DNA from: Diadema antillarum
Taxonomy: Eukaryota
Assembly: GCF_040938485.1 (NCBI RefSeq)
Contig: NW_027270981.1
Coordinates: 1,054,001 to 1,118,000 of the forward strand
DNA length: 64,000 bases
Direction: 5' to 3'
A program made the position numbers and the translations under genes. This document shows positions 13,272 through 54,000 of this stretch, one piece after another. Position 1 is the first letter of the stretch. Every line of letters begins with the position of its first letter. The notes beneath the pieces are model-generated. The model worked only from the letters and a program-made list of their open reading frames with translations, had not been told where the DNA came from and made no database searches.

Positions 13272-16049
13272 TCAGCATGATTCAATTGGTATGTAATTGA
13301 ATTCCTCTCGTATGAGCTTGTGTCGAAATTGCTCCCAGAACAAATCTTGCCTGTCTGTATTCTTAGCCCACATCAAGGTAGCTCTGTTGGCATTCAGGAG
13401 AAGTCGTACCAGATAGGGGAGTTGATCGTCGGAGATTTCCTCAAGGAAAATCAGTGTGACTCTGTCCAATCTGGTCTCATTAAGGTGTTCCAGAGCCATC
13501 CGCACCTTGGACATGAACCATGTGTCTGCCACTGACTCGTTGCTTAGTACGAGAAGGGTCTTGTAGCTGATTTCCATGGCATTGTATAGGGCGTCCACGT
13601 AGTGCATACCAGCATTCAGGTAGTTGTCAGCCCACAGAATGTTTGTGAAGTATGGAAACCTCTCTTCCATAGCAGGCTTCATGGTGCCATCGATCCATTC
13701 CGCATCAGCATCGTTGAACATGACATTGAGCTGGTATTGGTAGTTGTCGGCATTGTGCTCCTCAAGGTCCTCATATCCACGAATGGCCATTTTCATGAGG
13801 CAGACCTTGTTCCTCAGCCACCATCGCTTGCGATAAGCAAGCACACAGAGGAGTGATAGTACTATGAGTACCAGAAATGTTGTCACAATAGGCATGGCCA
13901 GACTCACAGCGCAAAGCTCCTCAGGATGAAACTGCAGGAGGGGTTTGTTGGCAGTACCCATCGTGGATGTCCTTTCACAGACAGTCTTGTTAGCATGCAT
14001 AAGTGCAATGTTATCGGTGTCCAGCAGAGTTCTGAACCATGCCAACTCACAGGAGCAGAGAATTGGATTTTTGGACAAATCAATTTCCACATTTTTTGGG
14101 AATACTGTGCCTGGAAGCACAGTACTCACATGATTCTGTGACATAAATATTTTTGAAAGATTAGGTGTGCTGTTGAACAGTGTGACTGGAATAGACTGTA
14201 TCAAATTGTCTTGAACAAAAACAGAATTAAGTTCTTGCAAGCCACAGAGTGTTTGTGTGTGCAATTTTATGAGTTGGTTGCCATGCAAACGCAAACTTGT
14301 GAGATGAGTAAGGCTATCAAACAGTTTTGCTTTGACAGCTGTAATTTTAGAATTGGAAATATCCAATACCTTGAGTTTAGTCAGTGGATCAAATGTACCA
14401 GGCTCCAATTTGTCTAATGTGTTGCCTCGCAAGAAGAGTTGTTCCAAAGATTTCAGGCCCAAGAACAAGGATGACTTATTGGAACTGTTGAACAGCTGCT
14501 CACTGGTTAATTTGGTGAAACTCATGTCAAGCATTACGAGGGATGCAGTACCACTAAATTGATCTGTTGAATTCATCTTCAGAGGAGACTTGGATAGGTC
14601 CAGTTTTTGCAGTTCATTCATGATACAGAAATCCCCTCGTAGATAGAGGTATTTCTCATTTACAAGCACCAGTTCTTTCATCGTCTTTGTGTGAGCAAAT
14701 GCTGAATTAAGGTCAGACCCAATATCATTGTGAGACATGTTCAGATACTGCAAATGAGAAAGTCCCCCAAATGAATACTTTGTTAAATGTGTTATTTTGT
14801 TGAAGGAGATGTCAAGATTTTCAAGTTTTGTTATAGAGGGAAATTTCTCCTGACTAAGCCCAATTACATTGTGAGACAAGTTTAGAAGGAGTATTGAATA
14901 CAACCCCTTAAAGGAGGCAGGATTTAGTGTCCTTATCCTGTTGTAAGATATCAGTAGTTTAAGGAGATTTGCATTGCAATGAAAGATACCATTTGGCAGG
15001 GACACAATCTCATTATGTGATAGGTCAAGAACCTGCAAGGATTGTAGTCCACAGAAAGATGTGTATAGGATGCTCCTAACCTTATTGCTCTGTATAATTA
15101 GAGTATGTGTATTATTCAGTCCCCAAAATGCAAACTCAGGAATTCTCTGAATGGCATTGTGTGTCAAATCTATGATCTTGATGTTTGGAAAACTGAAGTT
15201 GTATGATGATGAATTAACAGGGATTATTTCCTCAATGGATGAGCTATGTAGGGATAACTCAATGATATATGCTTCGCCCATGAATGCCAGGACCTCAAGC
15301 GCTTTAATGTTCATCCCATGGAGCAAAATGCTGCTGACGAAAGGAAGTTCAGAGAATAGCATTGGTCCTAGCTTATGAAGCCGCTTGTTTCTACTCAGAC
15401 CTAAAGATGACAATAAACAATTCTTCAGAGGTAGAAAGTCATGCTGTTGGATAGATGACAGGTTGTTTTGCGACAAATCGATGGATATATTGTCCCATCT
15501 AGATAAAGGATCAAAATGGAGGGACTGTATCCTGTTCGCTGAAAGAGAAAGTTGTGTCAGCTTTGGTGACCCTGCAAAGGCTGCACTGGGCATTGAAGTC
15601 AAATTTGTCTTTATGAGAGGCAGAGTTTCAAGGTTGATGTTTGCATGAAACCATCCATTTTGAATTTCGGTTAACTTGTTGTTTGATAAAATCAGTATTT
15701 GAAGTTGTTCAAGAGAGGAGAAGGTGCCATTTTCAATGTGAATGAGCCGGTTATATGCCACAATTAGCTTGAGGAGATTTCCAAGGCTTTGAAAGGAATT
15801 TTGCAGAAGTTCTGACATCCAGTTATTAGACAGATTCAAAATGACAGTATCATTTGGAAGGTCTCCAGGAACTGCCGTCAAGTTTAGTTTTCTACAGTCA
15901 ACATTAGTACCTTCTTTACTGCAATTGAGACAACAGTGATCTTTGCGGAACACCGTTCCTTTTCTTGTTCCGATCAGTTCTGATGAAAACAGGCCTCCTA
16001 TCCATAGAAACGTGAAGAGGTAGAATGCAGTGCAAATGTGAGTATGCAT
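13272..16049 (-). CDS. Toll-like receptor TLR-B (single-exon LRR-TM-TIR)
   Basis: 925-aa ORF: signal peptide, LRR-NT (HCC..C..DC), LRR array, NPILCSC LRR-CT, TM, TIR ending EEFNYIPIESC. Confidence 0.96.
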   Translation of the reverse strand: MHTHICTAFYLFTFLWIGGLFSSELIGTRKGTVFRKDHCCLNCSKEGTNVDCRKLNLTAVPGDLPNDTVILNLSNNWMSELLQNSFQSLGNLLKLIVAYNRLIHIENGTFSSLEQLQILILSNNKLTEIQNGWFHANINLETLPLIKTNLTSMPSAAFAGSPKLTQLSLSANRIQSLHFDPLSRWDNISIDLSQNNLSSIQQHDFLPLKNCLLSSLGLSRNKRLHKLGPMLFSELPFVSSILLHGMNIKALEVLAFMGEAYIIELSLHSSSIEEIIPVNSSSYNFSFPNIKIIDLTHNAIQRIPEFAFWGLNNTHTLIIQSNKVRSILYTSFCGLQSLQVLDLSHNEIVSLPNGIFHCNANLLKLLISYNRIRTLNPASFKGLYSILLLNLSHNVIGLSQEKFPSITKLENLDISFNKITHLTKYSFGGLSHLQYLNMSHNDIGSDLNSAFAHTKTMKELVLVNEKYLYLRGDFCIMNELQKLDLSKSPLKMNSTDQFSGTASLVMLDMSFTKLTSEQLFNSSNKSSLFLGLKSLEQLFLRGNTLDKLEPGTFDPLTKLKVLDISNSKITAVKAKLFDSLTHLTSLRLHGNQLIKLHTQTLCGLQELNSVFVQDNLIQSIPVTLFNSTPNLSKIFMSQNHVSTVLPGTVFPKNVEIDLSKNPILCSCELAWFRTLLDTDNIALMHANKTVCERTSTMGTANKPLLQFHPEELCAVSLAMPIVTTFLVLIVLSLLCVLAYRKRWWLRNKVCLMKMAIRGYEDLEEHNADNYQYQLNVMFNDADAEWIDGTMKPAMEERFPYFTNILWADNYLNAGMHYVDALYNAMEISYKTLLVLSNESVADTWFMSKVRMALEHLNETRLDRVTLIFLEEISDDQLPYLVRLLLNANRATLMWAKNTDRQDLFWEQFRHKLIREEFNYIPIESC

Positions 16050-17238
16050 TGTGGGCTCCCTCAGTCATCAATGCCTGAAGAATTGCTTGAAAACTCATTG
16101 AATGTCATTACTCCTTGAATAAGCAGTGAGACAATTTATCATTACAGAGATGGAACTCGTCGTCAATGGAAGTTATACCGCCCAAAGTGGTGACAGACAC
16201 CAAGAAGATGCACTGTGAAGAATATGTGAGAAAGTAAATTGCCTTCCTCTTCTATAATTACCAGGATAGTTGATGCACCAATTTCTTGTGATCTCGGCAA
16301 GCAAAATTTTGAACCAACATCAGTGCATCACGATCGTATAACAAAAAGTCCTTTGTCGAAAGAGCTCTAGCAAGTAGAGAATATCCTGTGCATGTGGTAT
16401 ATGAAAAGAGTCTAACAAATTCTCTCACTGGTGGCAGTAGTGACTGTAATGACTTGTGACATGCTCTTTGTATGCCTGTCAGCTTTGAAAACAGAAACAT
16501 CATTAATAAGTGCAAAAGTAGGGACAGGCTAGCTGCTTCCTGCATGTTTTATAACTTGCATGTGATTGGACTGTTTTATGAGAACTTGTGTGTGCGCGTG
16601 CACTTTAGCTTCACTGGTGGTTTTGTTTATAGTGTGTCGTCAGTGTAGGCTTCCTTTCCGCAGTTTAGGCCTATATTGTGATCATATTACTAACAATAGC
16701 AATGATTATTTCTGAGTGTATGAAATGTGATGAGTGCAGAGACACCATCCAATACAATTCTGTGGTATTAGTACAATAAAGAGAGTGAAATATGATAACA
16801 CGATATTGCCTCTTGAAAGTACAACTTTTCATCTTTTGAATGCAAAAAAAAAAAAAATGAAGCCAATATTAACCACGGAAAACTGCGGAAAACTGCTCAT
16901 CACGTAGAAATATGTACTACTTACTTCCTGTAACCTCTACAAAAATATTGAACGATGAGCCTAAATGGGCGGGAAATATGTGGATGCTTTAAAATTTTCT
17001 CATCTAATGATAAAGTAGCAACAATTTACTCGCCTGTTTGTACCAGGGAATTTTTTTTTCTGACATTTTACTGGTCCAGAGCCAATGGGCTAGTGGTGGT
17101 ATTAAGGTTTCATGAAAATCTGATTTCCTCTCAAAAATCTGATTTTGTTTTTAAGGATGTCCCATCTGTTTTGTTTTTTGTTTGTTTTGTTTTGTTTTGT
17201 TTTAATAATGTCAAGAAGCTGGTATCTCTGTGAGTGGT

Positions 17239-17242
<4 letters not shown>

Positions 17243-17293
<51 letters not shown>

Positions 17294-17301
17294 AAGAGAG
17301 A
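17243..17301. repeat. (GA)n microsatellite ~1.2 kb upstream of TLR-B
   Basis: (AG)21 followed by a degenerate purine tail. Confidence 0.95.
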
Positions 17302-18072
17302 TGTGCACCTGAGACATTGGTTGACACATTTTAATTGCAAGGTTAATCAATTCTGTAGAAAGATATTAAAAAGATATATTATGCCCTCTCATGTAGTTCC
17401 ATCTGTACAGATCAGCAACAATGTTGTGCCGTTTGAGATTGGTTTCACTTCAATAAGTGTATGGTTGCACCACAATCACCGTATGTAAGAAGACTACGCA
17501 ACAGCTCTCATGTAGCGATATTGCTGTGTTCAATACTCTGTTTCTTCTCAGTGAGGGCTAGAAATTATCATGAATTTTGTGTGCTCACAGGTGATAAAAT
17601 GATCTGATATATATTGGGATATGTTTGTTTTTTATTTCCTCTTCAAAATCACTGCATTCCTTGTTGTTTTTTAATAAGAGCTGTGATACAAAATGATGGT
17701 GTAGTGCTTTTTTTTTGGGGGGGGGGGAATATCTTGCATATTGTTGACTGAATTCCCATAATGAATAGAAAATAAAGTTTTCTCCAAGATACCTATATCA
17801 GGGCTTGACAATAACTTTTTCTTTTAGTGGCCTGACAATGAAATTTAATCCCTGAGGGCTACAGCTAATGTTCAGCCTTGCATACATGATGTTGTATAAT
17901 ATGTTTATTAGAATACAGATAAAACTAGAGAGATATTGAAACAATGTAAATGATATTTCCTAGCTTATGTTGAGTCATAGTAAGTGCTCATGGAGAACTT
18001 TGCTGTCTCAACCACCTGATGTATATTTTTAGACAAGTGATGGAGATGTCTGCCTAGATGTAAGACACTTAA

Positions 18073-18157
18073 CCCGTTGAGGACGAGTCCCGAGTATACT
18101 CGGGCAGGGGTCTATGGGAAATGGGTGTTGTAGCAAAATCAGTCCGTCCTCAACGGG
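18073..18157. mobile_element. 85-bp piggyBac-type MITE
   Basis: TTAA|CCCGTTGAGGACG ... CGTCCTCAACGGG|TTAA; the paralog at ~27562 has a single TTAA (gacacTTAAtggct); internal 16-bp palindrome cccgagtatactcggg. Confidence 0.92.
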
Positions 18158-19448
18158 TTAATGGCTGCAGTCTCCATGCTGATGTATTTCAATTGTATCT
18201 CTTCCTTTATAGTGCCTGGAATCAATAGCAGTAAAATCAGAAGAAATACACAGAGTGACCATATTTTGTCTTTTATGCTGTTCCCAAAACTTAGCACATT
18301 GATGCCAAAAAGAACATTTCTGGTAATAAAAAGGACCCAGTAAAATAAGTTTATTCTTTAAACTGATATTGAAGTTTATTCTGCAAACTGATATTGACAC
18401 AGCTCAAGTGTAATGTACAAAAAAAAATCAAACCAATTATACATCTTTGCAGCTTCCATTCATATAATTTTGCATTTTAAAAAGTGTACTTATTCTACAA
18501 TATGTACCCATGTAAATTGGATTCAAGCCTACATACAATTGTAGGCAGCAGATATGTATCATGGTGCACTTGTGTACCATGATATATATTATTTAAATAA
18601 ATATATTTGGTGACGTTTATCATTATTGTCTGTGCCAACATGCTCTTTGTTGACAATAAGTAGAGAGTCTTGAAAGTGAAGGTCTTGCATAAATTTTTGT
18701 GGGCATCAGGTAAAGTAGTATTTTTATCTAATCTAGCATAACCTCTATACTAGAGAAGGTACTCACATAATGCTATATTACAATTCAGATAGTGTTTAAG
18801 ATCGACGAATGTCATAATGAGTTTAAGGTTTGCAGAAAAAAATTGAGAAAAAACACTCTCACACGTTGATTTTATAGAGCTATTTCCATCAAGATCTATA
18901 TTGTATCATGAGAATAGAGAACTAGTGCCCCATTTACATTACACTCTGTATTCAGGTCTCAAAGTTTCAAGTTGCATAATTATCCTTGCTAATTTGGTCT
19001 GTGAGACTTGGCTGAAATGAAGTCAGACGTTGCAGGTATGAGTGAACAGGTGAATATCTTGCATGATAGTAGAAATAATTATGACAATGGTGATTCCTCA
19101 TCACCATAGTTCTCGAAAATTACACATCTTGGTATACAGAATGTTTCAAAGTGCTTAACATTCGGACATGCAGTACATTTAACCAGTTATGACCGTATGA
19201 CATACATACTATATGTGACGTACTACATTTGAACACACAATTTGATAAAGCATAAGTTGTTCCAAATGTATGCACGCATAATTGACAGCAATGTTTTTTC
19301 TATTACGGATGACTGAAACTACTTGGTTCAAAATATTCATGAAGTAACTTTTTTTAAATTATTATTATTTTTTTTTTAATGATCCATCAGGCCACAAGTA
19401 CTTACATGCTGGTCTAGAAATATGCTAATATAAATGTGTTCTATTTTT

Positions 19449-20759
19449 ATGCCTCCGCCACAAAGTGGTGCCGAAGGCATTATGTTTTCAGGTTGTCCGT
19501 CCGTCCGTCCGTCCGTCCGCTTTCGTTTACGTGATAACTTGAGTAATATTCACTGGAATTTTACCAAATTTGGTCCAAGTATGAAGTATGATGGGGCAAT
19601 TATTTGATTAGATTTTGGGTGAAATCAGCTAAAAGTCAAAGGTCAAAGGTGAAGGTCAAATCATGAAATTGTATCCGTTTACGTGATAACTCAAGACTGG
19701 ATAGAGCAAATTTCACGAAACTTTGTTGGAGGATGATGTATGATTGGACAATTACTTGATTAGTTTTTCAGTGCAATCGGACAGAGGTCAAAGGTCAAAG
19801 ATCAAGGTAAAATCCTAAAATTGATCTGTTTACGTGATAACTCAACACTGGATGAAGCAGCTTTCACCAAACTTGGTCCAAGAATGATGTATGATGGGAC
19901 AATTAGTTGAGTAGATTTTAGTGACATTGGCAAGAGGTCAAAGGTCAAAAGGTCAAGGTCAAATGCTACAAATGTTGCAATTTCCCCCATATCTATGCAA
20001 TGCCCAAAGGTATTTTCTTGAAACTTGGTGTGGACATGTACTACTGTGTAAAGATTCTCCAGAGAGAGTTTCATGTCATAAAGTCAAAGGTCAAAAGGTC
20101 AAAGGTTAGGTAAAAATGTTGCAATATCACTTTTCTCGCAAATGGTTCAATGTATCTTCGTGGAACTTGGTACATATACGCATGTACTGACTGGCAGGGA
20201 TTATCTAGGGAATTTAGGGGTCATGGGTCAATAGTCAGGGGGTCAAAGGTCAAGGTCAACTCCTCAAAATTTTACTATTTCCCTCGTATACTAGTGTATG
20301 CAATGCTTGCATTATTAGTATCAAAACTATATGCATTACCTAATGGAGATTTTCTGGGAAATTTCCAGCCAGAAGGTCAAAGATCAAAGGTTAAGGGTCA
20401 AAGGCCAGACAGGTTTCAATGCCCCCCCCCCAAAAAAAAAAAAAACACAAAACAAAACAAAAAACAAAAACAAAAACAAACAAAACAAACAAAACATTTT
20501 GTACCATTATTACACTCTTTTTTCATACCGTGGAAATTACTCAATGCATAAACTTCAATTCCCCAAATATGTACTGCACTCTTAGAAAATTAAAGCAAAC
20601 CCAGTTCAAGACATTTCTGACAAACCTGTCATTTCAATACTTTGCCACTTATGTGAAACTGTCATGGATCACACGTTGTGAAGACATTGTAGTATACGCC
20701 TATTGGGAGACTCATGCATTATGGCGGAGGCATCAGTCGCCATAGCGACATTTCTAGTT
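19449..20759 (+). mobile_element. Helentron-associated non-autonomous element (HINE/DINE-1-like), ~1.3 kb
   Basis: 5' subTIR gcctccgcca, (GTCC)n microsatellite, 3' inverted tggcggaggc, hairpin gtcgc-cata-gcgac, end ctagtt; inserted in a T run without a TSD; paralogs at ~11690 and ~29850 are empty. Confidence 0.85.
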
Positions 20760-21240
20760 ACCCTGTGAAATAATGGTGCTTGAAAAAAAAAATTATTCAT
20801 ATTCTAAATGATAGAAATCTTAAATTATTACTTTCAGTATTACCAGCAAGCATTCACAAATAGAATAAATCTGTATTTCATGTTGATTGATTTCACTTAG
20901 GTCTCTATGTCAAACTAAATCTCTCAAGTAGAAACTATCAAATCTTCTATATTAGCAGTTCCTTTGATACAACTTTTTCCTTGGCCATCCTTTGTCATGC
21001 AGTTACAATTTTGATACAATCACAAAGTAGCCAGACACAGCATGCATTCTGTTTAACAAGTTTGTTGCAGTATACAGCATCAAAACGTAATGCTTCACTG
21101 AGCAAAGTAGTTTCACTATTCTATGGAAATTAAAGAATATGAAGAAAGATTTTTAAAAAGAACAACAAAATTTATTGACAGCATGCAGTGTCAGGAATGT
21201 TGGTCAAGCAAATGATTGATTACCTGACTGGCACAGTACA

Positions 21241-21426
21241 CAGTGGACTCCCATTATAACAAAGTCCTTGGTACCAGCAGTTTTCTTTTGTTATATCGAA
21301 ACTTTGTTATAACCGAACAATTAAACAATAGAAATACATGGAGCGGATAATGTTGCGGCCTGAATTTTTACTTTGTTGTAACCAGAATTTCGTTATAACC
21401 GTGTTCGTCATAATGGGAGTGCACTG
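21241..21426. mobile_element. Tc1/mariner (Tigger-like) MITE
   Basis: TIRs cagtggactcccattat / ataatgggagtgcactg|TA; also present at 30337, absent from the TLR-B unit (~12075). Confidence 0.8.
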
Positions 21427-22209
21427 TACATGCTCTCATACAGAGTGATGTGTAGATGATATGCTCTTGTTAATTACATATTATCCACACCTGTTCCATT
21501 TCCTTGCTATACACTCTTCCTCATGAATTTTCTTGTAAGTACATGTTGGACAAGTACAAATATACATGCTCAATAGCTGATGGTCATAACAGAAAAAAGA
21601 AAATGGTTATGGTGAAATCAATTATTTAAGATTGAACCTTTGCAATGATATACATTTCAGACAATCAGAATTCAGCGTTCAAGACCAGTTATACATTAGT
21701 GTTTTCCCCCGTAATTTCAAAACAAGACACTTCATACAACAGAGTTCAGGCTTGGTTTACCAATTCTAAAGAAGGTCCCTTCTTAATTGCGCATTTGCAG
21801 CAGAATTATCTTGGTGTTACATACCGCAGTAATTTGTTGGCACTCATCTTGTTGGCAAAAAAAAAAAGAAAATGGTAAAAAATACTGCAGTAATTCATTT
21901 GGTACTCCTATCATTCAAGAAATATGTTTCTATTCCTGATAAACATTGCGCATGCCTGTTTCTACTGTGGGAAAAGACACAAATGAATATGTCACATGAG
22001 AGCTGCACAATTGGTGCTATTACATTACATAATTCACACTCACATGTATCTCAAATTATGTGCATTTTATACAAAGTTTGAAATATCACTGCATGTAAGT
22101 GCAGTGTACCTCATTATCTCATGATGTATTTCGCATTGTATCTGCCATACATCAATCTGTGTCTTTTAGCCTTCCCTTGTAAAGACATTTCCTTTTCAGC
22201 TCACAAAAT

Positions 22210-24984
22210 TCAGCATGATTCAATTGGTATGTAATTGAATTCCTCTCGTATGAGCTTGTGTCGAAATTGCTCCCAGAACAAATCTTGCCTGTCTGTATTC
22301 TTAGCCCACATCAAGGTAGCTCTGTTGGCATTCAGGAGAAGTCGTACCAGATAGGGGAGTTGATCGTCGGAGATTTCCTCAAGGAAAATCAGTGTGACTC
22401 TGTCCAATCTGGTCTCATTAAGGTGTTCCAGAGCCATCCGCACCTTGGACATGAACCATGTGTCTGCCACTGACTCGTTGCTTAGTACGAGAAGGGTCTT
22501 GTAGCTGATTTCCATGGCATTGTATAGGGCGTCCACGTAGTGCATACCAGCATTTAGATAGTTGTCAGCCCACAGAATGTTTGTGAAGTATGGAAACCTC
22601 TCTTCCATAGCAGGCTTCATGGTGCCATTGATCCATTCTGCATCAGCATCGTTGAACATGACATTGAGCTGGTATTGGTAGTTGTCGGCATTGTACTCCT
22701 CAAGGTCGTCATATCCGCGAATGGCCATTTTCATGAGGCAGACCTTGTTCCTCAGCCACCATCGCTTGCGATAAGCAAGCACACAAAGGAGTGATAGTAC
22801 TATGAGTACCAGAAATGTTGTCACAATAGGCATGGCCAGACTCACAGCGCAAAGCTCCTTAGGATGAAACTGCAGGAGGGGTTTGTTGGCAGTACCCATC
22901 GTGGATGTCCTTTCACAAACAGTCTTGTTAGCATGCATAAGTGCAATGTTATCGGTGTCCAGCAGAGTTCTGAACCATGCCAACTCACAGGAGCAGATAA
23001 TTGGATTTTTGGACAAATCAATTTCCACATTTCTGGGGAATACTGTGCCTGGAAGCACAGTACTCACATGATTCTGTGACATAAATATTTTTGAAAGATT
23101 AGGTGTGCTATTGAACAGTGTGACTGGAATAGACTGTATGAAATTGCCTTGAACAAAAACAGAATTAAGTCGTTGCAAACCACTGAGTGTTTGTGTGTGC
23201 AATTTTATGAGTTGGTTGCCATGCAAACGCAAACTTGATAGAAGAGTCAGACTCTCAAACAGTTTTGCTTCAACAGCTGTAATTCTAGAATTGGAAATAT
23301 CTAATATCTTGAGTTTAGTTAGTGGATCAAATGTACCAGGCTCTATTTTGTTTCGAAAATAGTTTCCTTGCAAGAAGAGTTGCTCCAAAGATTTTAGGCC
23401 CAAGAACAGGGAAGATCGTTTGGAACTATTGAACAGATGCGTACTTTGCAGGTTGGTGAAGCTCATGTCAAGCATTGTGAGGGATGCAGTACCACTAAAT
23501 TGATCTGTTGAATTCATTTGCAAAGGTGAATGGGATAGATCCAGTTTTTGCAGTTTGTCCAAGGTACGAAAATCTTCATGTATTTGTAGATTTTTCTCAT
23601 ATGTAAGAATCAGTTCTTTCATCTGCCGTGTGCTGGCAAATGCTGAAGTAAATTCAGAGTTAATATCATTGTAAGACATATTAAGGTATTGCAAATGGGA
23701 CAATCCCCCCAATAGACTTTTTGTTATTTGTGTCATTTTGTTGGAGCAGAGGTCAAGATTGACAAGTGATGTCATAGAAGTGAACTTGTCTCGACTGTTT
23801 TCTAATGAGTTGTAAGACAGGTTGAGATGGAGTAATGAACTCAACCCCTCAAAAGAAGCAGAATGTAGTCTCATTATCTTGTTGTAAGATAGCAGCAGTC
23901 GAAGGAGATGTTCATTGCAGTGAAAGGCACCATCTGGCAGAAATATGATTTGATTGTGTGATAGGTCAAGAACCTGCAAATCATCTAGTGAACAGAAAGA
24001 TGTATTTTGGATACTGAAAACTTTATTTTCCCTTATAATGAGAGTTTGCGTCCAATTCAGTCCCAAAAATGCAAACTCAGGAATTTTCTGAATAAGATTG
24101 GATGCCAAATCTACAATCTTGATGTTGGGAAAGTTGAAGTCATGTGCTGACACATTCACAGGAATTATTTCCTTGATGGAAGAGCCATACAAGGATAACA
24201 CTGTGATATTTGCTGTGCCCATGAATGCCAATACCTCAAGACTTTTAATGCTGTTTCCTCGGAGCAAAATGCTTCTGACAAAAGGAAGTTCAGAGAATAC
24301 CATTGGCTCTAGGTGAAGCCACTTGTTCCCACTCAAAACTAAATGTGACAATGAACATTTCTTGAGAGGTAAGAAGTCTTCCTTGTGGATAGATGATAGG
24401 TTGTTTGCTGACAAATCAATAGATATATCATCCCATCTAGACAATGGATCGAAGTGGAGAGACTGTATCCAGTTTGCTGAGATTGTAAATGTTGTCAGCT
24501 TTGGTAACTCTGCAATGGCTGCACTTGGCATTGAAGTAAAATTGTTCTTTATAAGAATCAGAGTTTTAAGGTTGATATTAGCATGAAACAGTCCATTTTG
24601 AAATCCAGTTAACTTGTTGCGCGATAAGATCAGTACTTGAAGATGTTCAAGCCAGGTGAAGGTGCCATTTTCAATGCGGATGAGCCGGTTATATGCCACA
24701 TTTAGCTTGAGAAGATTTCCATGGCCATGAAAGGAATTGTGGAGAAGTTCTGATATCCAGTTATGTGATAGATTCAAAATGAAAGTATCGTTTGGAAGGT
24801 CCCCAGGAACTTCTGTCAAGTTTTGTTTTGTGCAGTCAGCACGAGTACCTTCACTACTGTCACTGAAACAACAATGATCTTCGCTGAGCACCAGTTTTCT
24901 TGTTCTGATCAGTTCTGATGAAAATATGCCTCGTATCCATAGAAACGTGAAGAGGTAGAGGGCAGCGCAAGCCTGGGTATGCAT
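22210..24984 (-). CDS. Toll-like receptor TLR-C (single-exon LRR-TM-TIR)
   Basis: 924-aa ORF with the same architecture as TLR-B; the C-terminal ~309 aa differ from TLR-B at 6 positions. Confidence 0.96.
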   Translation of the reverse strand: MHTQACAALYLFTFLWIRGIFSSELIRTRKLVLSEDHCCFSDSSEGTRADCTKQNLTEVPGDLPNDTFILNLSHNWISELLHNSFHGHGNLLKLNVAYNRLIRIENGTFTWLEHLQVLILSRNKLTGFQNGLFHANINLKTLILIKNNFTSMPSAAIAELPKLTTFTISANWIQSLHFDPLSRWDDISIDLSANNLSSIHKEDFLPLKKCSLSHLVLSGNKWLHLEPMVFSELPFVRSILLRGNSIKSLEVLAFMGTANITVLSLYGSSIKEIIPVNVSAHDFNFPNIKIVDLASNLIQKIPEFAFLGLNWTQTLIIRENKVFSIQNTSFCSLDDLQVLDLSHNQIIFLPDGAFHCNEHLLRLLLSYNKIMRLHSASFEGLSSLLHLNLSYNSLENSRDKFTSMTSLVNLDLCSNKMTQITKSLLGGLSHLQYLNMSYNDINSEFTSAFASTRQMKELILTYEKNLQIHEDFRTLDKLQKLDLSHSPLQMNSTDQFSGTASLTMLDMSFTNLQSTHLFNSSKRSSLFLGLKSLEQLFLQGNYFRNKIEPGTFDPLTKLKILDISNSRITAVEAKLFESLTLLSSLRLHGNQLIKLHTQTLSGLQRLNSVFVQGNFIQSIPVTLFNSTPNLSKIFMSQNHVSTVLPGTVFPRNVEIDLSKNPIICSCELAWFRTLLDTDNIALMHANKTVCERTSTMGTANKPLLQFHPKELCAVSLAMPIVTTFLVLIVLSLLCVLAYRKRWWLRNKVCLMKMAIRGYDDLEEYNADNYQYQLNVMFNDADAEWINGTMKPAMEERFPYFTNILWADNYLNAGMHYVDALYNAMEISYKTLLVLSNESVADTWFMSKVRMALEHLNETRLDRVTLIFLEEISDDQLPYLVRLLLNANRATLMWAKNTDRQDLFWEQFRHKLIREEFNYIPIESC

Positions 24985-27723: not shown

Positions 27724-28352
27724 CATGAGACAAATCTCTCGTTTGAAGAAGCTACACCCATGTAGACAATGCCAGTGTATATCTTGGCAATCAAGGACTT
27801 AAAAACCAAAGATATAAAACACCAGTTTCTTGACCCTGGCCTAATCTAAACATCAGTCACCGCCACAGGGGGGGGGGGGGGGGGGGGGGGCACCCGCGAG
27901 AGGAGGAGATTGTTTTGGTTTTAGCATGGGCTATGTAGCTCCATGGTGCGTGTGTGTGTCGGCAAACTCCTATAATGCTCTCCTTCTTATTCCTGTATTT
28001 TCATTATTTATGGGTCAAATTTTTCGTTCGAAATTTAAAACGTATGACCATAGAATTTCTCAGTAGAATATAAAATTTAAAACTTTAGAAAGAATAGAGA
28101 AAATTGAGTTCACTTTGAATGGTCTGCCACAGGCAGATATCCTTATCATGTTCTTACGTAATATGACAGCTGTTGCAGTCATTAAACCCTGGCTTGGCCT
28201 CCAGGTTTGCTACGCCTGAGTAGAAAGTTATTTTGCAATGGGCAAATACATATCCTCCCACTTCTCAAATGAGGACTCGTTAGGGGGGTATAGCACCCCA
28301 TCAGCTTCGTTTGCCAATGGGGTCTCGTCTCAAACGGGGGTTTGACGGCATG
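27724..28352. mobile_element. Degenerate TIR insertion, ~630 bp, with a G23 run at 27868-27890
   Basis: Interrupts aagaacatt|tctggtaa, which is contiguous in three paralogs; imperfect TIRs around caaa..cgtttga..cccat. Confidence 0.65.
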
Positions 28353-29021
28353 TCTGGTAATAAGTAGGACCCAGTAAAATAAGTTTATTCTTTAAACTGA
28401 TATTGAAGTTTATTCTTAAAACTGATATTGACACAGCTCAAGTGTAATGAACAAAAAAAAAAAAAAAAAAACCAATGATACATCTTTGCAGCTTCCATTC
28501 ATATAATTTTAGATTTTAAAAAGTATAGTATTCTACAATATGTACCCATGTAAATTGGATTCAAGCCTACATAGTATACAATTGTAGGCAGCAGATATGT
28601 ATCAGGGTGCACTTGTGTACCATGATATACAATGTATATTATTTGAATAAATATATTTGGTGACGTTTATCATTATTGTCTATGTCAACATGCTCTTTGT
28701 TGACAATATGTTGAGAGTCTTGAAAGTGAAGGTCTTGCATAAATTTTTGTGGGCATCAGGTGAATTAGTAGTTTTATCTAATCTAGCATAACCTCTATAC
28801 TAGAGAAGGTACTCACATAATGCTATATTACAATTCAGATAGTGTTTAAGATCGACGAATGTCATAATGAGTCCAAGGTTTGCAGAGAAAAAAATTGAGA
28901 AAAAATACTCTCACACGTTGATTTTATACAGCTATTTCCATCAAGATCTATATTGTTTCATGAGAATAGAAAACTAGTGCCCCATTTACATTACACTGTG
29001 TATTGAGGCCTCACAGATTAA

Positions 29022-29401
29022 AGGGGCTGTACAGTACTGGTTGAGGTGGGGATTCATGTTTTTTACATTCCTCAGTGAGATAATGAATAACCTCTTATGA
29101 AAATTGAAAGAGCATGTAATTTTAAGGATTCAACATTCATTTGATGAAAATTGATTTTCAAATGGCTGAGATATCCAAAAAAGTAATAATGATAAAAGAC
29201 TACAGGCCACAACTTTATTAGGATCTCTTTGTTTCACCTTGTTTTTGGATATCCCGGCCACTTCAAAACCGATTTTCATCAAATAAACTTTTGATACCCC
29301 TTAGAATTGCGCGCTCTTTGACATCTCACATAGTGGTTTCTGAATATCTCACAAAATGTTAAAAGCTAAATCCTCACCTCAACCAGAACTCTACACACCT
29401 C
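29022..29401. mobile_element. TTAA-target (Kolobok-like) MITE, 380 bp
   Basis: TTAA|aggggctgtacagtactggttgaggtggggatt ... aatcctcacctcaaccagaactctacacacctc|TTAA; single TTAA at paralogs ~2555 and ~11210. Confidence 0.88.
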
Positions 29402-30336
29402 TTAAAGTTTCAAAATTATCCTTGCTAATTTGGTCTGTGAGACTTGGCTGAAATGAAATCAGATGTTGCAGGTATGATTTAACAGGTGAATATCTTGCAT
29501 GATAATTATGACAATGGTGATTCCTCGTTACCATAGTTATCAAACATTATAGTATACATACAGAATGTTTCAAAGTGCTTAACATTCGGACATGCAGTAC
29601 ATTGAACCAATTATGACCGTATGACATATATATATGTGACATACTACATCTGAACACACAATGTGATAAAGCATAAGTTGTTCCAAATGTATGCGTGCAT
29701 AATTGACAGCAATGTTTTTTCTATCATGGATGACTGAAACTACTTGGTTCAAAATATTCATGGAGTAGCTTTTTTTTAATTATTTTCTTTTTGATGATTC
29801 ATCAGGCCACAAGTATTTACATGCTGATCATATAGAAATGTGTTCTATTTTTGCCCTTTGAAATAATGGTGCTTGAAAAAAATAATTTTTCGTATTTTGA
29901 ATGATAGAAATCTTAAATTATTACTTTCAGTATTACCAGCAAGCATTCACAAATAAAATAAATCTGTATTTCATGTTGGTTGATATCACTTTAATAGGTC
30001 TCTATGTCAAACTAAATCTCTCAAATAGAAACTGTCAAATCTTCTGTATTAGCAGTTCCTTTGATACAACTTTTTCCTTGGCCATCCTTTGTCATGCAGT
30101 CACAATTTTGATACAATTTCAAAGTAGCCAGACACAGCATGCATTCTGTTTAACAAGTTTGTTGCAGTATACAGCATCAAAACATAATACTTCACTGAGC
30201 AAAGTAGTTTCACTATTCTATGGAAATTAAAGAATATGAAGAAAGATTTAAAAAAGAACAACAAAATTTATTGACAGCATGCAGTGTCAGGAATGTTGGT
30301 CAAGCAAATGATTGATTGCCTGACTGGCACAGTAAA

Positions 30337-31293: not shown

Positions 31294-34071
31294 TTAGCAT
31301 GATTCAATTGGTATGTAATTGAATTCCTCTCGTACAAGCCTGTGCCGAAATTGCTCCCAGAACAAATCTTGCCTGTCTGTATTCTTAGCCCACATCAGGG
31401 TAGCTCTGTTGGCATTCAGGAGAAGTCGTACCAGATAGGGGAGTTGATCGTCGGAGATTTCCTCAAGGAAAATCAGTGTGACTCTATCCAATCTGGTCTC
31501 GTTAAGGTGTTCCAGAGCCATACGCACCTTGGACATGAACCATGTGTCTGCCACCGATTGGTTACTTAGCACGAGAAGGGTCTTGTAGCTGATTTCCATG
31601 GCATTGTATAGGGCGTCCACGTAGTGCATGCCAGCATTCAGATAGTTGTCAGCCCACAGAATGTTTGTGAAGTATGGAAACCTCTCTTCCATAGCAGGCT
31701 TCATGGTGCCATTGATCCATTCCGCATCAGCATCGTTGAACATGACATTGAGCTGGTATTGGTAGTTGTCGGCATTGTGCTCCTCAAGGTCCTCATATCC
31801 GCGAATGGCCATTTTCATGAGGCAGACCTTGTTCCTCAGCCACCATCGCTTGCGATAAACAAGCACACAGAGGAGTGACAGTGCTATGAGTACCAGAGAT
31901 GTCACAATTGTCACGACAGGACTCACAATGCAAAGCTCCTCAGGATGAAACTGCAGAAGGGGTTTGTTGGCAGTACCCATCGTGGATGTCCTTTCACAAA
32001 CAGTCTTGTTAGCATGTATAAGTGCAATGTTATTTGTGTCCAGCAGAGTTCTGAACCATGTCAACTCACAGGAGCAGATAATTGGATTTTTGGACAAATC
32101 AATTTCCACATTTCTGGGGAATACTGTGCCTGGAAGCACAGTACTCACATGATTCTGTGACATAAATATTTTTGAAAGATTAGGTGTGCTGTTGAACAGT
32201 GTGACTGGAATAGACTGTATGAAATTGCTTTGAACAAAAAGAGAATGAAGTTGTTGCAGGCCACAAAGTGTTTGTGTGTTCAATTCTATGAGTTGGTTGC
32301 CATGCAGACGTAAACTTGATAGAAGAGTCAGGCTGTTGAACAGTTTTGCTCTGACAACTGTAATTTTAGAATTAGAAATATCCAATACCTTGAGTTTAGT
32401 CAGTGGATCAAATGTACCAGGTTTCAATTTGTTTAAGAAGTTGTTGCCTTGCAAGAAGAGTCGTTCCAAAGATTTCAGGCCCAAGAACAAGGAAGATCGT
32501 TTGGAAATGTCAAACAGATGCATACTTTGCAGGTTGGTGAAGCTCATGTCAAGCATTATGAGGGATGCAGTACCACGAAATTGATCTGTTGAATTCATAG
32601 TCAGAGGTGAATGGGATAGATTCAGTTTTTGCAGTTTGTCCAAGGTGCAAAAGTCTTCATGTAGATGCAGATTTTTCTCATATGAAAGAATCAGTTCTTT
32701 CATCTTCCGTGTGCTGGCAAAAGCTGAATTAATGTCAGATTCAATATCATTGTTAGACATGTTAAGATACTGCAAATGAGAAAGTTTCCTGAATAGATTT
32801 TTTGTTAGTCTTGTCATTTTGTTGCAGCAAAGGTCAAGATTGACAAGGGATGGCATAAAAGTGAACTTGTCTAGACTGTTTTCTAATGAGTTGTAAGACA
32901 GGTTCAGATGGAGTAATGAACTCAATCCCTTAAAAGAAGTAGAATGTAGTCTCATTATCTTGTTGTAAGATAGCAGCAGTTCAAGGAGATGTTTATTGCA
33001 GTGAAAGGCAAAATCTGGCAGAAATATGATTTGATTATGTGATAGGTCAAGAACCTGCAAATCATCTAGTGAACAGAAAGATGTATTTTGGATACTGAAA
33101 ACTTTATTTTCCCTTATAATGAGAGTTTGCGTCCAATTCAGTCCCAAAAATGCAAACTCAGGAATTTTCTGAATAAAATTGTCTGTCAAATCTATGATCT
33201 CGATGTTTGGAAAACTGAAATTGTATGCTGATGAATTAACAGGGATTATTTCCTTAATTGAAGAGTTTTGTAGAGATAACTCAGTGATATATGCTTTGCC
33301 CATGAATGCCAGGACCTCAAGCTTTGTAATGTTAATCCCATGGAGCAAAATGCTGCTGACAAAAGGAAGTCCAGAGAATACCATAGGTCCTAGAAGGTGA
33401 AGCCGCTTGTTTCTGCTCAGGACTAAAGATGACAATAAACAATTCTTCAGAGGTAGAAAGTCATGCTGTTGGATAGATGACAGATTGTTTTGCGACAAAT
33501 CGATGGATATATTGTCCCATCTAGATAAAGGATCAAAATGGAGAGACTGTATCCTGTTCGCTGAAAGAGTAAGTTGTGTCAGCTTTGGTGACCCTGCAAA
33601 GGCTGCACTGGGCGTTGAAGTCAAATTCGTCTTTGTGAGAGGAAGAGTTTCAAGATTGATTTTTGCATGAAACCATCCACCTTGAAATTCAGTTAACCTG
33701 TTGTATGATAAATTCAGTACTTGAAGATGTTCAAGAGAGGAGAATGTGCCATTTTCAATTTGGATGAGCCGGTTATATGCCACATTTAGCCTTAGAAGAT
33801 TTCCATGACCATGAAAGGAATTATGGAAAAGTTCTGATATCCAGTTGTGTGATAGATTCAAAATGACAGTGTCATTTGGAAGGTCCCCAGGAACTGTTGT
33901 CAAGTTTCGTCTTGTGCAATCAGCACAAATACCTTCTCCACTGTTACTGAGACAACAGTGATCTTCGCTGAGCACATGTTGCTTTCTTGTTCCGATCAGT
34001 TCTGATGAAAATATGCCTCCTATCCATAGAAATGTGAAGAGGTAGAGTGCAGCGCAAACTAGGGTATGCAT
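31294..34071 (-). CDS. Toll-like receptor TLR-D (single-exon LRR-TM-TIR), B/C mosaic ectodomain
   Basis: 925-aa ORF with the same architecture; alternating tracts are near-identical to TLR-B or TLR-C. Confidence 0.96.
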   Translation of the reverse strand: MHTLVCAALYLFTFLWIGGIFSSELIGTRKQHVLSEDHCCLSNSGEGICADCTRRNLTTVPGDLPNDTVILNLSHNWISELFHNSFHGHGNLLRLNVAYNRLIQIENGTFSSLEHLQVLNLSYNRLTEFQGGWFHAKINLETLPLTKTNLTSTPSAAFAGSPKLTQLTLSANRIQSLHFDPLSRWDNISIDLSQNNLSSIQQHDFLPLKNCLLSSLVLSRNKRLHLLGPMVFSGLPFVSSILLHGINITKLEVLAFMGKAYITELSLQNSSIKEIIPVNSSAYNFSFPNIEIIDLTDNFIQKIPEFAFLGLNWTQTLIIRENKVFSIQNTSFCSLDDLQVLDLSHNQIIFLPDFAFHCNKHLLELLLSYNKIMRLHSTSFKGLSSLLHLNLSYNSLENSLDKFTFMPSLVNLDLCCNKMTRLTKNLFRKLSHLQYLNMSNNDIESDINSAFASTRKMKELILSYEKNLHLHEDFCTLDKLQKLNLSHSPLTMNSTDQFRGTASLIMLDMSFTNLQSMHLFDISKRSSLFLGLKSLERLFLQGNNFLNKLKPGTFDPLTKLKVLDISNSKITVVRAKLFNSLTLLSSLRLHGNQLIELNTQTLCGLQQLHSLFVQSNFIQSIPVTLFNSTPNLSKIFMSQNHVSTVLPGTVFPRNVEIDLSKNPIICSCELTWFRTLLDTNNIALIHANKTVCERTSTMGTANKPLLQFHPEELCIVSPVVTIVTSLVLIALSLLCVLVYRKRWWLRNKVCLMKMAIRGYEDLEEHNADNYQYQLNVMFNDADAEWINGTMKPAMEERFPYFTNILWADNYLNAGMHYVDALYNAMEISYKTLLVLSNQSVADTWFMSKVRMALEHLNETRLDRVTLIFLEEISDDQLPYLVRLLLNANRATLMWAKNTDRQDLFWEQFRHRLVREEFNYIPIESC

Positions 34072-51000: not shown

Positions 51001-54000
51001 TTTAAAACAGTTTTTGTGAATGCATTCATCGCAAAACAATGAAATGGATGCTTCCCCGACGGATGATTGACGAACCATTCTGGTCACTGCAGGTCTATGC
51101 AAGTTCCTGCATTGTTTGAACACGAATTCCATGAATTGTTAGGTTGGGCAAGCTTACCGGTACGCATAATGTCTCTTTGAAAACGATTAAAGTGCCTAAC
51201 CAACTGAGAAAAAAGAAAGGTCATTTGTACCAACGTGTCCATGAGCTAAGTACGAACTGGCTTATTAATTCAGATATTTGGAGCACTGGTCAACCTACTT
51301 TGCATATTGATACCTTAGTGGCCTCTAATCATCACACAAGGTCACTGAACTGTATCAAGCCAAAAATTTGATGAATATGGCTGTGGCTTCCTGACCTTGT
51401 CAACCTATGTGCTCTCTAGGTGGAAAAAGACATTACTATGAAGTGCAACATGATTACTTACAAGAAATTTCTATCAGAATCCATGAGGCTTTGCTTTTGA
51501 AAAGGTAATTTGACATTTCACACATGTAAGACATTTTGGTAAATTTTTGGGTGGTTACATTCTTGATCAAGAACCACAGTAGAACCACTGTAGAAGTAAG
51601 TCTTATCTCTTTTTAGGAAGCAGAGTTAGAGATTATTCATGAAATAATAAGTGCATTGCATTTGTGTTACAGGAGGAATTATTTCTGCATGTTGTGTTAG
51701 GATGAGTAGACTTGAGGAAAATAAAGCCACTTTGAAAGATATTGCATGTACATATGTCCACTCTCCATTTTCAAATCACACTCTTTTTGCAACATTACAA
51801 TTGTCTTTTGTAGATGGTGCAAGTGTTTCATTTTTCTTTTCAATTTTTTTTTTTGGCATTTGGATTCAAGGTTTCATTTTACTCATTCTCGTATTCAGGT
51901 GAAGAAGCCAGGCACATCCATCAACTGCCTTCAGCTTTCCACCGATGATCTAACTCTCTTTGTTGGAGACTCCATGGGTAAGAGTTACTTGACACTCACA
52001 GAATGAGACAACACACATTGTCTGATGAAAAAAAAGATGAGACAGGCTCACATCTGATAGAAATTGAAATGTTTCGGCATGGATAGCACTTCTGTTTCGG
52101 TATAGCTTAGTATCCCCCATCCCTCCCCATGGCTGAAATCTTAAAAAAAAACAAAAAAAGGAAGGAGAAGAAGAAGAAAAAAGTGCTGACACAATTACCT
52201 CACATACACAATTAGTAGCATCAGCGAATAAAAGGGCTTTGATAGTTGCATTAGAGGGAAAATGTGTATAACACACTGTGATGGGAGGTGCAAGTCAAGG
52301 AAATGCATGCATATTTGTTTTTGTTATGTTAATGGTAAAGGTTTATTTTATTGTGCAATAGCTAATATTTTTTAATGTATGTTTGTATATATTTGGATGT
52401 ATTCATGTTAATTCATGTAAAATATCTGCAATTCAGCCTGCGAGCTGCAATGGATGTTATCCAATAAATATCTTTCAATAATTCCATGGGGAGGTTTTCA
52501 AATTGTAAATTGTCCTATAAACAAAATATGGATATTTAGAATGGAGCTTATTTATCTGCACATGTATTTTAAATGCCAGAATGCCAGATTGAAAAAGAAT
52601 GTGATGTAAGACCTTGAGAGTCACTTGGTTTTCACATTGTTGTACACTTTTTCTTCAGATTATTATTACCTCCGCCAAGGGAGGAGGTTATGTTTTCGTT
52701 ACGGTTGGTTAGTTAGTTAGTTAGTTTGTCCGTGTGCAAAATAACTCAAAAAGCGGTTAACGGATTGGGATGAAACTTGCAGGAAAGGTTGAGAATGACA
52801 CAAGTAACAAACGATTAACTTTTGGTAGTGATCCGAAAATTTTGGGGGAATTTATGAAGAATTTTTGTTATTTTTGCAGGTAGGGTCAATGAACTTGGGA
52901 GTTCAGGCTGCGCGTATTTGAGGTTTGCATGCGCGCACTAAAGTGCGTGCTCTAGTTTCTGCTAGGGCGAGGCGCGCCATGCAGCTGAGGGTTTATGACG
53001 TAACAAAGGCTTCTATATTGGGAAATTGGGCGACTTTCAGCACACAATGCTATATAAGTACGTATGGGGGAAATCACTGATATCTCTATGGAAGAACAAG
53101 ATCAGTGGTGGAGATGAGCTGCATGCTTGGCGGAGGTCTACGCTCTCAGAGTGCTTTTCTAGTTATTATTTTCTCTCTTTTTTGTAATTGCAGGTTTCAT
53201 TTCTGTGTGGGACATTGATCACTACTGCCTTCAGAGACCTGACAACATTGAGGAACCTCCTGAGAGTGAGCTACGCCCTTTTCGCTCCAGAATTAGAAAC
53301 TTCAATAAAAATGAGTTGGGGCATGTGACATCTCTCAGACCACACTCTCTCTTCCTATGTGAAAGCAAACTCTCACAGCTATATTCAGCCAGTTTTGCTT
53401 CCTGGTCTATATTGAAGTTTGTGATTGTTTTTTTTTTCTTTCCATCCATCTACCATATTATGTAGGTTAAAGAGGTAGGGACATACATCAGCTATTCCAT
53501 TTTTTTTTAAGCATGTATTGATCTATCCTTTTATGATGATGTATCTCACAGATATGGACTTGTCTCACATGTTTTGGACTTTGCATGATGAAGAATATTC
53601 ATAATTATTAATCATTACTTAATAAGTTTCTCTCTGTGTGACTCTGTAGGAAAAAATGTAATGACAAAGATAATCCTAGCTTCCTTTCTGCTTGCTATAT
53701 ATTGAGTAATTACACGATGTAGGTGATATACACATTGTAGCTAATGTATGTAATGTACTTTGATAAAGGCATCATGTGGCTTGTATGTCAGTGAAGCATA
53801 TGAATACACAGTTGGGCCCTTTTTGCTTTTGGCATATTTTTGTTACTTATACAGACAAATGGGGAGAATATGAATCCTAGAAGCACTTTGATGTTATATT
53901 CTTTAACTTTGTGTTATTCTTTCTTGTTTGTTTGCAGTGATGGGATCATGGAGAGGCCATATTCAAAGCATCACAAGGTTTGATTTCATCTATACTTCTT

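What the first reader, a model, noticed from the sequence alone, without database searches (positions are those of the whole stretch)
32420..34071. TLR-D ectodomain is a block mosaic of TLR-B and TLR-C
Seen: 33443-33613 matches TLR-B 15421-15591 with 3 mismatches in 171 nt (AFAGSPKLTQL.LSANRIQSLHFDPLSRWDNISIDLSQNNLSSIQQHDFLPLK), where TLR-C is clearly different. Then 33022-33176 matches TLR-C 23941-24095 with 1 mismatch in 155 nt (IQKIPEFAFLGLNWTQTLIIRENKVFSIQNTSFCSLDDLQVLDLSHNQII), where TLR-B is clearly different. The switch lies at ~33175-33185. The N-terminal ~125 aa again resemble TLR-C (SEDHCC, NSFHGHGNLL, LEHLQVL). Inference: in-frame LRR-block shuffling by gene conversion or unequal crossover generates new germline ligand-binding surfaces, a combinatorial diversification route for an invertebrate innate receptor family.
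Basis: partly seen in the sequence, partly recalled or inferred. Interest (0 to 1): 0.8.

Follow-up and report, generated by a model that had tools for sequence, protein, structure and literature searches.

The report
Gene-conversion mosaic in urchin TLR gene
One of four tandem Toll-like receptor genes of the sea urchin Diadema antillarum carries short stretches copied from its two neighbours, a real but ordinary product of gene conversion and unequal crossing-over in a tandem gene array.

Summary
D 33443-33613 differs from TLR-B at 3 of 171 positions, D 33022-33176 differs from TLR-C at 1 of 155, and the switch lies between 33176 and 33182. Permutation tests, incongruent segment trees and AU tests show recombination.

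The window is Diadema antillarum (GCA_040938485.1, contig JBFRCO010000093.1). The D. setosum array supplies orthologues: D~S1, B~S2/S3, C~S4. Against these, TLR-D is not simply B plus C:
- About 800 nt of its ectodomain (33641-34071 and 32480-32849) is D's own lineage.
- A B-derived block (about 33182-33634) is roughly as old as the species split.
- A C-derived tract (33038-33181, no synonymous differences from C) is very recent.

The mosaic is identical across both junctions on the second haplotig of the same animal. Its junction 31-mers occur in contigs from an independent sample, so it is not an assembly chimera.

The second haplotig lacks one whole repeat unit (D-C-A instead of D-C-B-A), which shows unequal crossing-over in this array. 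Its D allele is frameshifted.

The claimed role in generating new ligand-binding surfaces is untested. Verdict: germline interlocus gene conversion, a new example of a known process. This scan had not found it before on other DNA.

The parts
31294..34071 (-). TLR-D, intact 925-aa intronless ORF (signal peptide, LRR ectodomain, TM at aa 719-739, TIR)
   Evidence: ORF. LRR_8 E 2.5e-68. The C-terminal 185 aa match TLR6/10/1/2 TIR structures at E 1e-9. Annotated as a 925-aa gene on JBFRCO010000093.1.
33641..34071 (-). 5' block of D's own lineage (orthologous to D. setosum S1), not derived from C
   Evidence: Divergence D-S1 3.5%, D-B 15.5%, D-C 12.6%. The (D,S1) clade has 99/99 support.
33182..33640 (-). 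B-derived block. Its upstream junction lies at 33633-33635.
   Evidence: D is nested in the B clade as (D,(B,S2)) at 97/94, and AU rejects (D,S1) at p=0.0026. pS for D-B is 0.087-0.152 against 0.209-0.331 for D-S1.
33176..33182 (-). Switch from B-like to C-like sequence. It falls in codons 297-299, inside the LxxLxLxxNxL core of an LRR.
   Evidence: Difference lists, maximum chi-square break at 33176, LRR register.
33038..33181 (-). Recent C-to-D conversion tract (two LRR units, aa about 298-345)
   Evidence: D-C has 1 difference in 144 nt and pS of 0/30. D-S1 is 10.4% and D-B 21.5%. C and D share derived states at 33127 and 33146 that S4, S1 and the B-types lack.
32850..33037 (-). Continuation that is C-like but older or ambiguous
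   Evidence: D-C 6.9%, D-S1 10.6%, D-B 29.8%. The 33181-32850 tree places D with (C,S4) at 97/95, and AU gives p=0.022.
32480..32849 (-). Second block of D's own lineage
   Evidence: D-S1 6.5%, D-C 12.2%, D-B 21.9%. The (D,S1) clade has 83/84 support.
32272..32479 (-). Weakly B-like patch, unresolved
   Evidence: pS for D-B is 0.17, against 0.29 for D-S1 and 0.31 for D-C. The tree is unresolved and AU gives p=0.32.
31294..32271 (-). LRRCT/TM/TIR half, homogenised among B, C and D within the species
   Evidence: Pairwise identity is 94-100%, and B=C is 100% over the last ~500 nt. The segment tree groups by species rather than by gene type.
23957..24100 (-). Donor stretch in TLR-C for the recent tract
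   Evidence: Offset 9081. The tract sequence is C-type, because it matches the C orthologue S4 at 96.5%.
15160..15618 (-). Homologous stretch in TLR-B (present-day representative of the donor type)
   Evidence: Offset 18022.
13272..22209 (-). One repeat unit (TLR-B plus the C-B spacer, or an equivalent register) that is absent from the other haplotig of the same animal
   Evidence: In JBFRCO010001322.1, C2 is followed directly by sequence 98.8% identical to window 13271-3280.

Best explanation
TLR-D is the first gene of a tandem array of Toll-like receptor genes (D-C-B-A) in Diadema antillarum. The array lies in an intron of a large gene on the other strand.

Its ectodomain is D's own lineage, overwritten in register by at least two germline interlocus gene-conversion events:
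- An older one copied about 450 nt from a B-type gene (about 33182-33634).
- A very recent one copied at least 139-144 nt, two LRR units, from TLR-C (33038-33181).

The same array also undergoes unequal crossing-over in the near-identical TM/TIR-coding 3' halves. This changes copy number and re-orders units. The two haplotypes of the sequenced animal carry 4 and 3 genes, and D. setosum carries 5 in a different order.

Shown: the mosaic, its statistical support, the donor types, the relative ages, its presence in two haplotypes and an independent sample, and the copy-number difference.

Inferred: the molecular route (mispaired homologous repair or recombination between tandem copies), and that the exchange alters ligand binding. 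It replaces about 11 residues in two LRRs relative to the orthologue S1.
For: - Exact identities. Clustering of site patterns, maximum chi-square break and run-length permutations.
- Orthology from D. setosum loci L001 and L002: C-S4 97.9%, B-S2 96.1%, D-S1 92.0%.
- Incongruent segment trees, with AU rejecting (D,S1) in the B block (p=0.0026) and the C block (p=0.022). The flanking blocks give (D,S1) at 99/99 and 83/84.
- Synonymous divergence: D-C 0/30 in the recent tract, D-B 0.09-0.15 in the B block, against an orthologue level of about 0.10-0.13.
- The D allele on haplotig JBFRCO010001322.1 is identical from 34071 to 33147, across both junctions.
- Contigs of run X3 (a different study and sample) cover 32874-33181 with 0 differences and 33152-33452 with 1 difference. 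They therefore contain 31-mers that carry the C-type sites 33167/33175/33176 together with the B-type sites 33182/33186/33195/33196. An X2 contig covers 33362-33921, across the upstream junction.
- Copy-number difference and spacer orthology that point to unequal crossing-over.
Against: - The B block is not uniformly close to the present TLR-B. 33399-33182 is 11% diverged, so the donor may have been an earlier or lost B-type copy, or the block may be several events.
- For 33580-33640 the polarity rests on one outgroup species. S1 there is about 20% from everything and may itself be the altered copy.
- The segment boundaries used for the trees and AU tests were chosen after seeing the data.
- Read evidence is Logan contigs only. 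The X3 contig has 25 letters, not 31, on the C side of the junction, and no raw long read was inspected.
- The assembly was polished with short reads, which can transfer paralogous sequence (PMC13511894).
- There is no evidence that the exchange is adaptive. One allele is frameshifted.
Confidence: 0.8

Rival explanations
1. Assembly or polishing artefact: hifiasm, RagTag or Racon merged reads of the paralogues or haplotypes, creating a chimeric TLR-D.
For: The assembly was patched with ONT reads of other animals and polished with Illumina reads by Racon, and it keeps both haplotypes (PMC13511894). Tandem paralogues with 85-100% identity are error-prone.
Against: The same junctions are on two separately assembled haplotigs. 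Contigs from an independent study and sample (X3, X2) reproduce the D-specific sequence across both junctions with 0-3 differences. The junctions are about 450 nt apart, far less than the 6.8 kb mean HiFi read.
Confidence: 0.04
2. There was no exchange. Local similarity reflects purifying or convergent selection on particular LRRs.
For: LRR framework residues are conserved, and both well-defined junctions lie in conserved LxxLxLxxNxL cores.
Against: Identity extends to synonymous sites: pS for D-C is 0/30 in the tract, against 0.20-0.42 in neighbouring blocks. The topology changes with strong support. C and D share derived substitutions that are absent from both orthologues.
Confidence: 0.02
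3. TLR-D is a hybrid gene made by simple unequal crossovers (fusions), not by non-reciprocal conversion tracts.
For: Unequal crossing-over is demonstrably active in the array. The haplotigs differ by one unit. D's upstream flank is orthologous to that of S1, but its downstream spacer is orthologous to the one that follows the B-type gene S3 in D. setosum. The 3' part of D from about 32479 on may therefore come from a B-type gene.
Against: The B and C blocks are internal, flanked on both sides by D-lineage sequence (33641-34071 and 32480-32849). A single crossover cannot produce that. The two blocks also differ greatly in age.
Confidence: 0.1
4. Somatic, VLR-like or otherwise programmed LRR cassette exchange in immune cells.
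For: None beyond the analogy. LRR cassettes are exchanged in register.
Against: The reference DNA is sperm. The same mosaic is found in two haplotypes and in other individuals, and the B block is about as old as the species split. All of this points to inherited germline sequence.
Confidence: 0.01

Closest known systems
Gene conversion between tandem mammalian TLR1 and TLR6 (Kruithof et al. 2007, BMC Evol Biol 7:148, PMC2077338, as cited in PMC3078537)
   Same: These are also tandem TLR paralogues exchanging sequence by interlocus conversion, with the TIR-coding half homogenised within a species.
   Different: As summarised in PMC3078537, conversion there limits the divergence of the pair. Here the short tracts lie in the LRR ectodomain and make one copy a patchwork of three lineages. 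The array also shows copy-number polymorphism.
Sequence exchange in plant LRR resistance-gene clusters (recombination, mispairing, duplication and gene conversion, as summarised in PMC1988830; Cf-4/9 and similar cases from my own knowledge)
   Same: These are tandem LRR receptor genes in which unequal crossing-over and conversion reshuffle LRR segments and change copy number between haplotypes.
   Different: They belong to a different kingdom and receptor architecture. In plants new specificities were shown experimentally. Here no ligand or phenotype is known.
Expanded sea urchin TLR families (Buckley and Rast 2012, PMC3367398)
   Same: They share the intronless single-exon sccTLR type, tandem arrays, a diverse ectodomain with a conserved TIR, pseudogenes and rapid turnover.
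   Different: That paper attributes the diversity to duplication, turnover and positive selection, and does not mention gene conversion or recombination. This locus gives a concrete, polarised case in a diadematoid urchin.
Lamprey VLR assembly (from my own knowledge)
   Same: LRR cassettes are copied in register into a receptor gene by a mechanism resembling gene conversion.
   Different: VLR assembly is somatic, programmed and uses dedicated incomplete cassettes. Here the exchange is germline, sporadic and between complete genes.

Membership tests
Toll-like receptor (single cysteine-cluster, vertebrate-like type) | Extracellular LRR solenoid | tested here: met
   PF13855 LRR_8 at E 2.5e-68 with 10 stretches. 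About 20 LxxLxLxxNxL cores were read in the protein.
Toll-like receptor (single cysteine-cluster, vertebrate-like type) | Single transmembrane segment followed by a cytoplasmic TIR domain | tested here: met
   A hydrophobic stretch lies at aa 719-739. Pfam TIR_2 scores only 23.2 bits, below the 28-bit cut-off. However, the last 185 aa match the TIR domains of TLR6, TLR10, TLR1 and TLR2 in the PDB at E 1e-9 to 1e-8.
Toll-like receptor (single cysteine-cluster, vertebrate-like type) | Function in immune recognition or signalling | not testable with these tools
   No RNA run holds the stretch, and no ligand data exist.
Interlocus (ectopic) gene conversion | Tract of sharply raised identity between paralogues, flanked by diverged sequence, beyond chance | tested here: met
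   There are 30 consecutive matching polymorphic sites against a maximum of 18 in 10000 permutations. Maximum chi-square was reached by 0 of 1000 permutations.
Interlocus (ectopic) gene conversion | Phylogenetic incongruence between the tract and its flanks | tested here: met
   Segment trees and AU tests. The caveat is that the segments were defined after inspecting the data.
Interlocus (ectopic) gene conversion | Identity includes synonymous sites (exchange rather than selection) | tested here: met
   pS for D-C is 0/30 in 33181-33038.
Interlocus (ectopic) gene conversion | Non-reciprocal: the donor keeps its own type and the recipient changes | tested here: inconclusive
   The tract sequences match the donor-type orthologues (S4 for C; S2 and S3 for B), not the D orthologue S1. 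That fits C-to-D and B-to-D transfer. Only one outgroup species is available, and reciprocity cannot be seen in extant sequence.
Interlocus (ectopic) gene conversion | Present in real DNA molecules, not only in the assembly | tested here: met
   A second haplotig and contigs of independent runs X3 and X2 carry it. Raw long reads were not inspected.
Unequal crossing-over (NAHR) in a tandem array | Haplotypes that differ by whole repeat units, with breakpoints in homologous sequence | tested here: met
   The window has D-C-B-A and the other haplotig has D-C-A. The flanks are 98.5-98.8% identical on both sides. The breakpoint cannot be placed within the homogenised 3' gene half.

The most novel reading that the evidence does not exclude
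This array may be a segregating, plant-R-gene-like recombination system. Under this reading, frequent in-register LRR tract exchange plus unit gain, loss and re-ordering continually produce new receptor alleles, and selection sorts them in Diadema populations. D. antillarum has suffered mass die-offs. The D1 and D2 alleles differ only inside the C tract across the ectodomain 5' half, and the haplotypes differ in gene number. Both are compatible with very recent, ongoing events.
Probability: 0.2. Interest if true: 0.6.

Novelty: new member of a known kind. Interest (0 to 1): 0.4.

Why it matters
Echinoderm TLR families are the largest known, and their diversity has been described mainly in terms of duplication, turnover and positive selection (PMC3367398).

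This locus gives a clean, polarised example showing that interlocus gene conversion and unequal crossing-over also shape the LRR ectodomain. The evidence includes two haplotypes of one animal and a sister-species outgroup.

There is a practical consequence. Gene trees, orthology calls and PAML-type selection scans on such families will be misled unless recombination is modelled. The result does not reveal a new mechanism.

Tried and rejected
- **TLR-A as outgroup.** At 56% nucleotide identity it is too distant to polarise anything. D. setosum orthologues were used instead.
- **Loose end at 33093 in runs X1 and X4.** It looked like a second recombinant with another breakpoint. It is a B-type contig (exact in B and S2, one mismatch in S3) that shares only about 21 nt of local similarity with D, so it was dismissed.
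- **Doubled contig depth over the C=D tract as evidence for two real copies.** Depths are summed over contigs and most contigs are not listed, so this was not used.
- **Placing the crossover that removed one unit in the other haplotig.** C2 carries an interleaved mix of B1 and C1 states at the 20 informative 3' sites, so no single breakpoint can be called.
- **Junctions coinciding with LRR cores.** Two well-defined junctions fall in LxxLxLxxNxL cores. These cores make up almost half of each repeat and have few informative sites, so there is no significance.
- **Literature.** No paper in the held library reports gene conversion in echinoderm TLRs. Rast et al. 2006 and Hibino et al. 2006 could not be read, so prior mention there cannot be excluded.
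- **TLR-B protein look-up.** The exact TLR-B protein is not on record in the contig index.

Full report
**What is there.** The window carries four intronless ORFs of 924-931 codons on the minus strand: A 3525-6320, B 13272-16049, C 22210-24984, D 31294-34071. All have many LRR_8 repeats (E 1e-67 to 1e-82). Each has a hydrophobic segment near residue 720 and a C-terminal TIR domain. The TIR domain is sub-threshold in Pfam, but it matches the TIR structures of TLR6, TLR10, TLR1 and TLR2 at E 1e-9. B, C and D are 87-90% identical to one another in DNA, and A is 56% identical to them.

**Source.** The window is Diadema antillarum, assembly GCA_040938485.1, contig JBFRCO010000093.1, where D is annotated as a 925-aa gene. 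The array lies inside a 1117-residue EF-hand/WD40 gene on the other strand.

**The observation.**
- D against B has 3 mismatches in 171 nt, where C has 32.
- D against C has 1 mismatch in 155 nt, where B has 37.

Sliding-window identity and the string of informative sites show D matching B from about 33640 to 33182 and matching C from 33181 downstream. The maximum chi-square breakpoint is at 33176 (0 of 1000 permutations reach it). The C=D run of 30 polymorphic sites exceeds every one of 10000 permutations. The switch is bounded by 33176 and 33182.

**Outgroup.** D. setosum (OZ188196.1; loci L001 and L002) has the same array with five genes:
- S1
- S2, with a stop at codon 121
- S3
- S4
- an A-like gene

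S2 and S3 are only partly covered by the fetched loci. Orthology by identity is C-S4 97.9%, B-S2 96.1% (S3 94.1%) and D-S1 92.0%. Upstream flanks confirm that D and S1 are positional orthologues.

**Anatomy of D against these references.**

| D block | D-S1 | D-B | D-C | Reading |
|---|---|---|---|---|
| 34071-33641 | 3.5% | 15.5% | 12.6% | D's own lineage; (D,S1) at 99/99 |
| 33640-33182 | pS 0.21-0.33 | pS 0.09-0.15 | - | B-derived |
| 33181-33038 | 10.4% | - | 1 difference, pS 0/30 | recent copy from C |
| 33037-32850 | 10.6% | - | 6.9% | C-like, ambiguous |
| 32849-32480 | 6.5% | - | - | D's own lineage; (D,S1) at 83/84 |
| 32479-32272 | - | - | - | weakly B-like, unresolved |

- **34071-33641.** The N-terminus is D's own lineage. 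It resembles C only because the D-type and C-type lineages are sisters.
- **33640-33182.** D is nested in the B clade as (D,(B,S2)) at 97/94, and AU rejects (D,S1) at p=0.0026. The block is B-derived and about as old as the species split, since orthologue pS is about 0.10-0.13. It is heterogeneous: the core 33400-33640 is 3-5% from B, and 33182-33399 is 11% from B.
- **33181-33038.** This is a very recent copy from C. C and D share derived states at 33127 and 33146 that S4, S1 and all B-types lack.
- **Remainder (LRRCT, TM, TIR).** It is homogenised within the species, and B=C is 100% over the last ~500 nt.
- **An older layer.** In the B block, S1 itself groups with the B clade rather than with C (100/100). 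An older exchange therefore predates the species split.

**Is it real DNA?** The published assembly keeps both haplotypes of one sperm donor (PMC13511894). Contig JBFRCO010001322.1 (L003 and L004) is the second haplotig, 98.5-98.8% identical in the flanks.

Its D allele is identical to the window from 34071 to 33147, across both junctions. Overall it differs by 13 substitutions and a 1-bp insertion near 33115 that shifts the frame. That explains the truncated 553-aa NCBI model P0003.

Only Logan contigs were available for reads. Run X3, from a different study and sample, has contigs at 32874-33181 (0 differences) and 33152-33452 (1 difference). These contain 31-mers that join C-type and B-type diagnostic sites. 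Run X2 has a contig at 33362-33921 across the upstream junction. The tool's 31-letters-each-side rule is missed by 6 letters on one side, so this is good support, not proof. HiFi reads averaging 6.8 kb span the whole gene.

**Unequal crossing-over.** The second haplotig has D-C-A. After C2 it continues directly with sequence 98.8% identical to window 13271-3280, so one unit of about 9 kb is missing.

The units D+spacer and C+spacer are tandem duplicates. The D-C spacer is orthologous to the S3-S4 spacer of D. setosum (92-97%), and the B-A spacer is orthologous to the S4-SA spacer.

I infer that crossovers in the homogenised 3' gene halves have deleted, duplicated and re-ordered units. In terms of gene types the orders are:
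- D. setosum: D, B, B', C, A
- D. antillarum: D, C, B, A or D, C, A

**Mechanism and function.** The route is homologous mispairing between tandem copies, resolved either as conversion tracts or as crossovers. The recent tract replaces two LRRs (aa about 298-345) and about 11 residues relative to S1. Whether this changes binding, or is favoured by selection, is untested. One allele appears broken.

**Comparison with what is known.** Conversion between tandem TLRs is known for TLR1 and TLR6 (cited in PMC3078537). LRR exchange in plant R-gene clusters is classical (PMC1988830). The main echinoderm TLR analysis does not mention recombination (PMC3367398). This is therefore a new, well-documented example of a known process.

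Noticed in passing
window 13272-22209, against L003/L004 (JBFRCO010001322.1:330630-361390): The two haplotigs of the sequenced animal differ in TLR gene number. The window has D-C-B-A and the other haplotig has D-C-A. One unit of about 9 kb is missing, with flanks 98.5-98.8% identical.
   Followed up: yes
window about 33112-33116; L003:9841: The D allele on the other haplotig has a 1-bp insertion plus a neighbouring substitution that shifts the frame at about codon 319. NCBI models that allele only as a 553-aa C-terminal fragment (P0003). Whether it is real or a consensus error was not checked.
   Followed up: partly
window 33147-34071, against L003: There are no differences between the two D alleles over 925 nt of the 5' ectodomain. 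The flanks differ by 1.2-1.5% and genome heterozygosity is 2.5%. The few ectodomain differences cluster inside the C-derived tract.
   Followed up: no
window 31294-32271, 22210-23190 and 13272-14250: The TM/TIR-coding halves of B, C and D are homogenised within the species. C2 on the other haplotig shows an interleaved mix of B1 and C1 states at the 20 sites that distinguish them.
   Followed up: partly
whole window, + strand: The entire TLR array sits inside a 1117-residue gene with EF-hand and WD40 domains on the opposite strand, in both Diadema species. The GC-skew shift at about 52000-58000 was not examined.
   Followed up: no
L001:20532-22781 and L002:1-2346 (D. setosum): There are two further B-type TLR copies that the annotation does not call. 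S2 has an in-frame stop at codon 121. Gene order by type in D. setosum is D, B, B', C, A, against D, C, B, A in the window.
   Followed up: partly
window 651-3232, 9017-11860, 18234-19449 and 28349-29826: A repeated element, 80-92% identical between copies, recurs in the spacers and brackets TLR-A. At 82-87% identity the copies around A are not young.
   Followed up: no
L002:20084-22775 (D. setosum A-like gene): The A-like gene matches in two different reading frames in my tblastn, although a 931-aa product is annotated. This could be an intron, a frameshift or a modelling choice.
   Followed up: no
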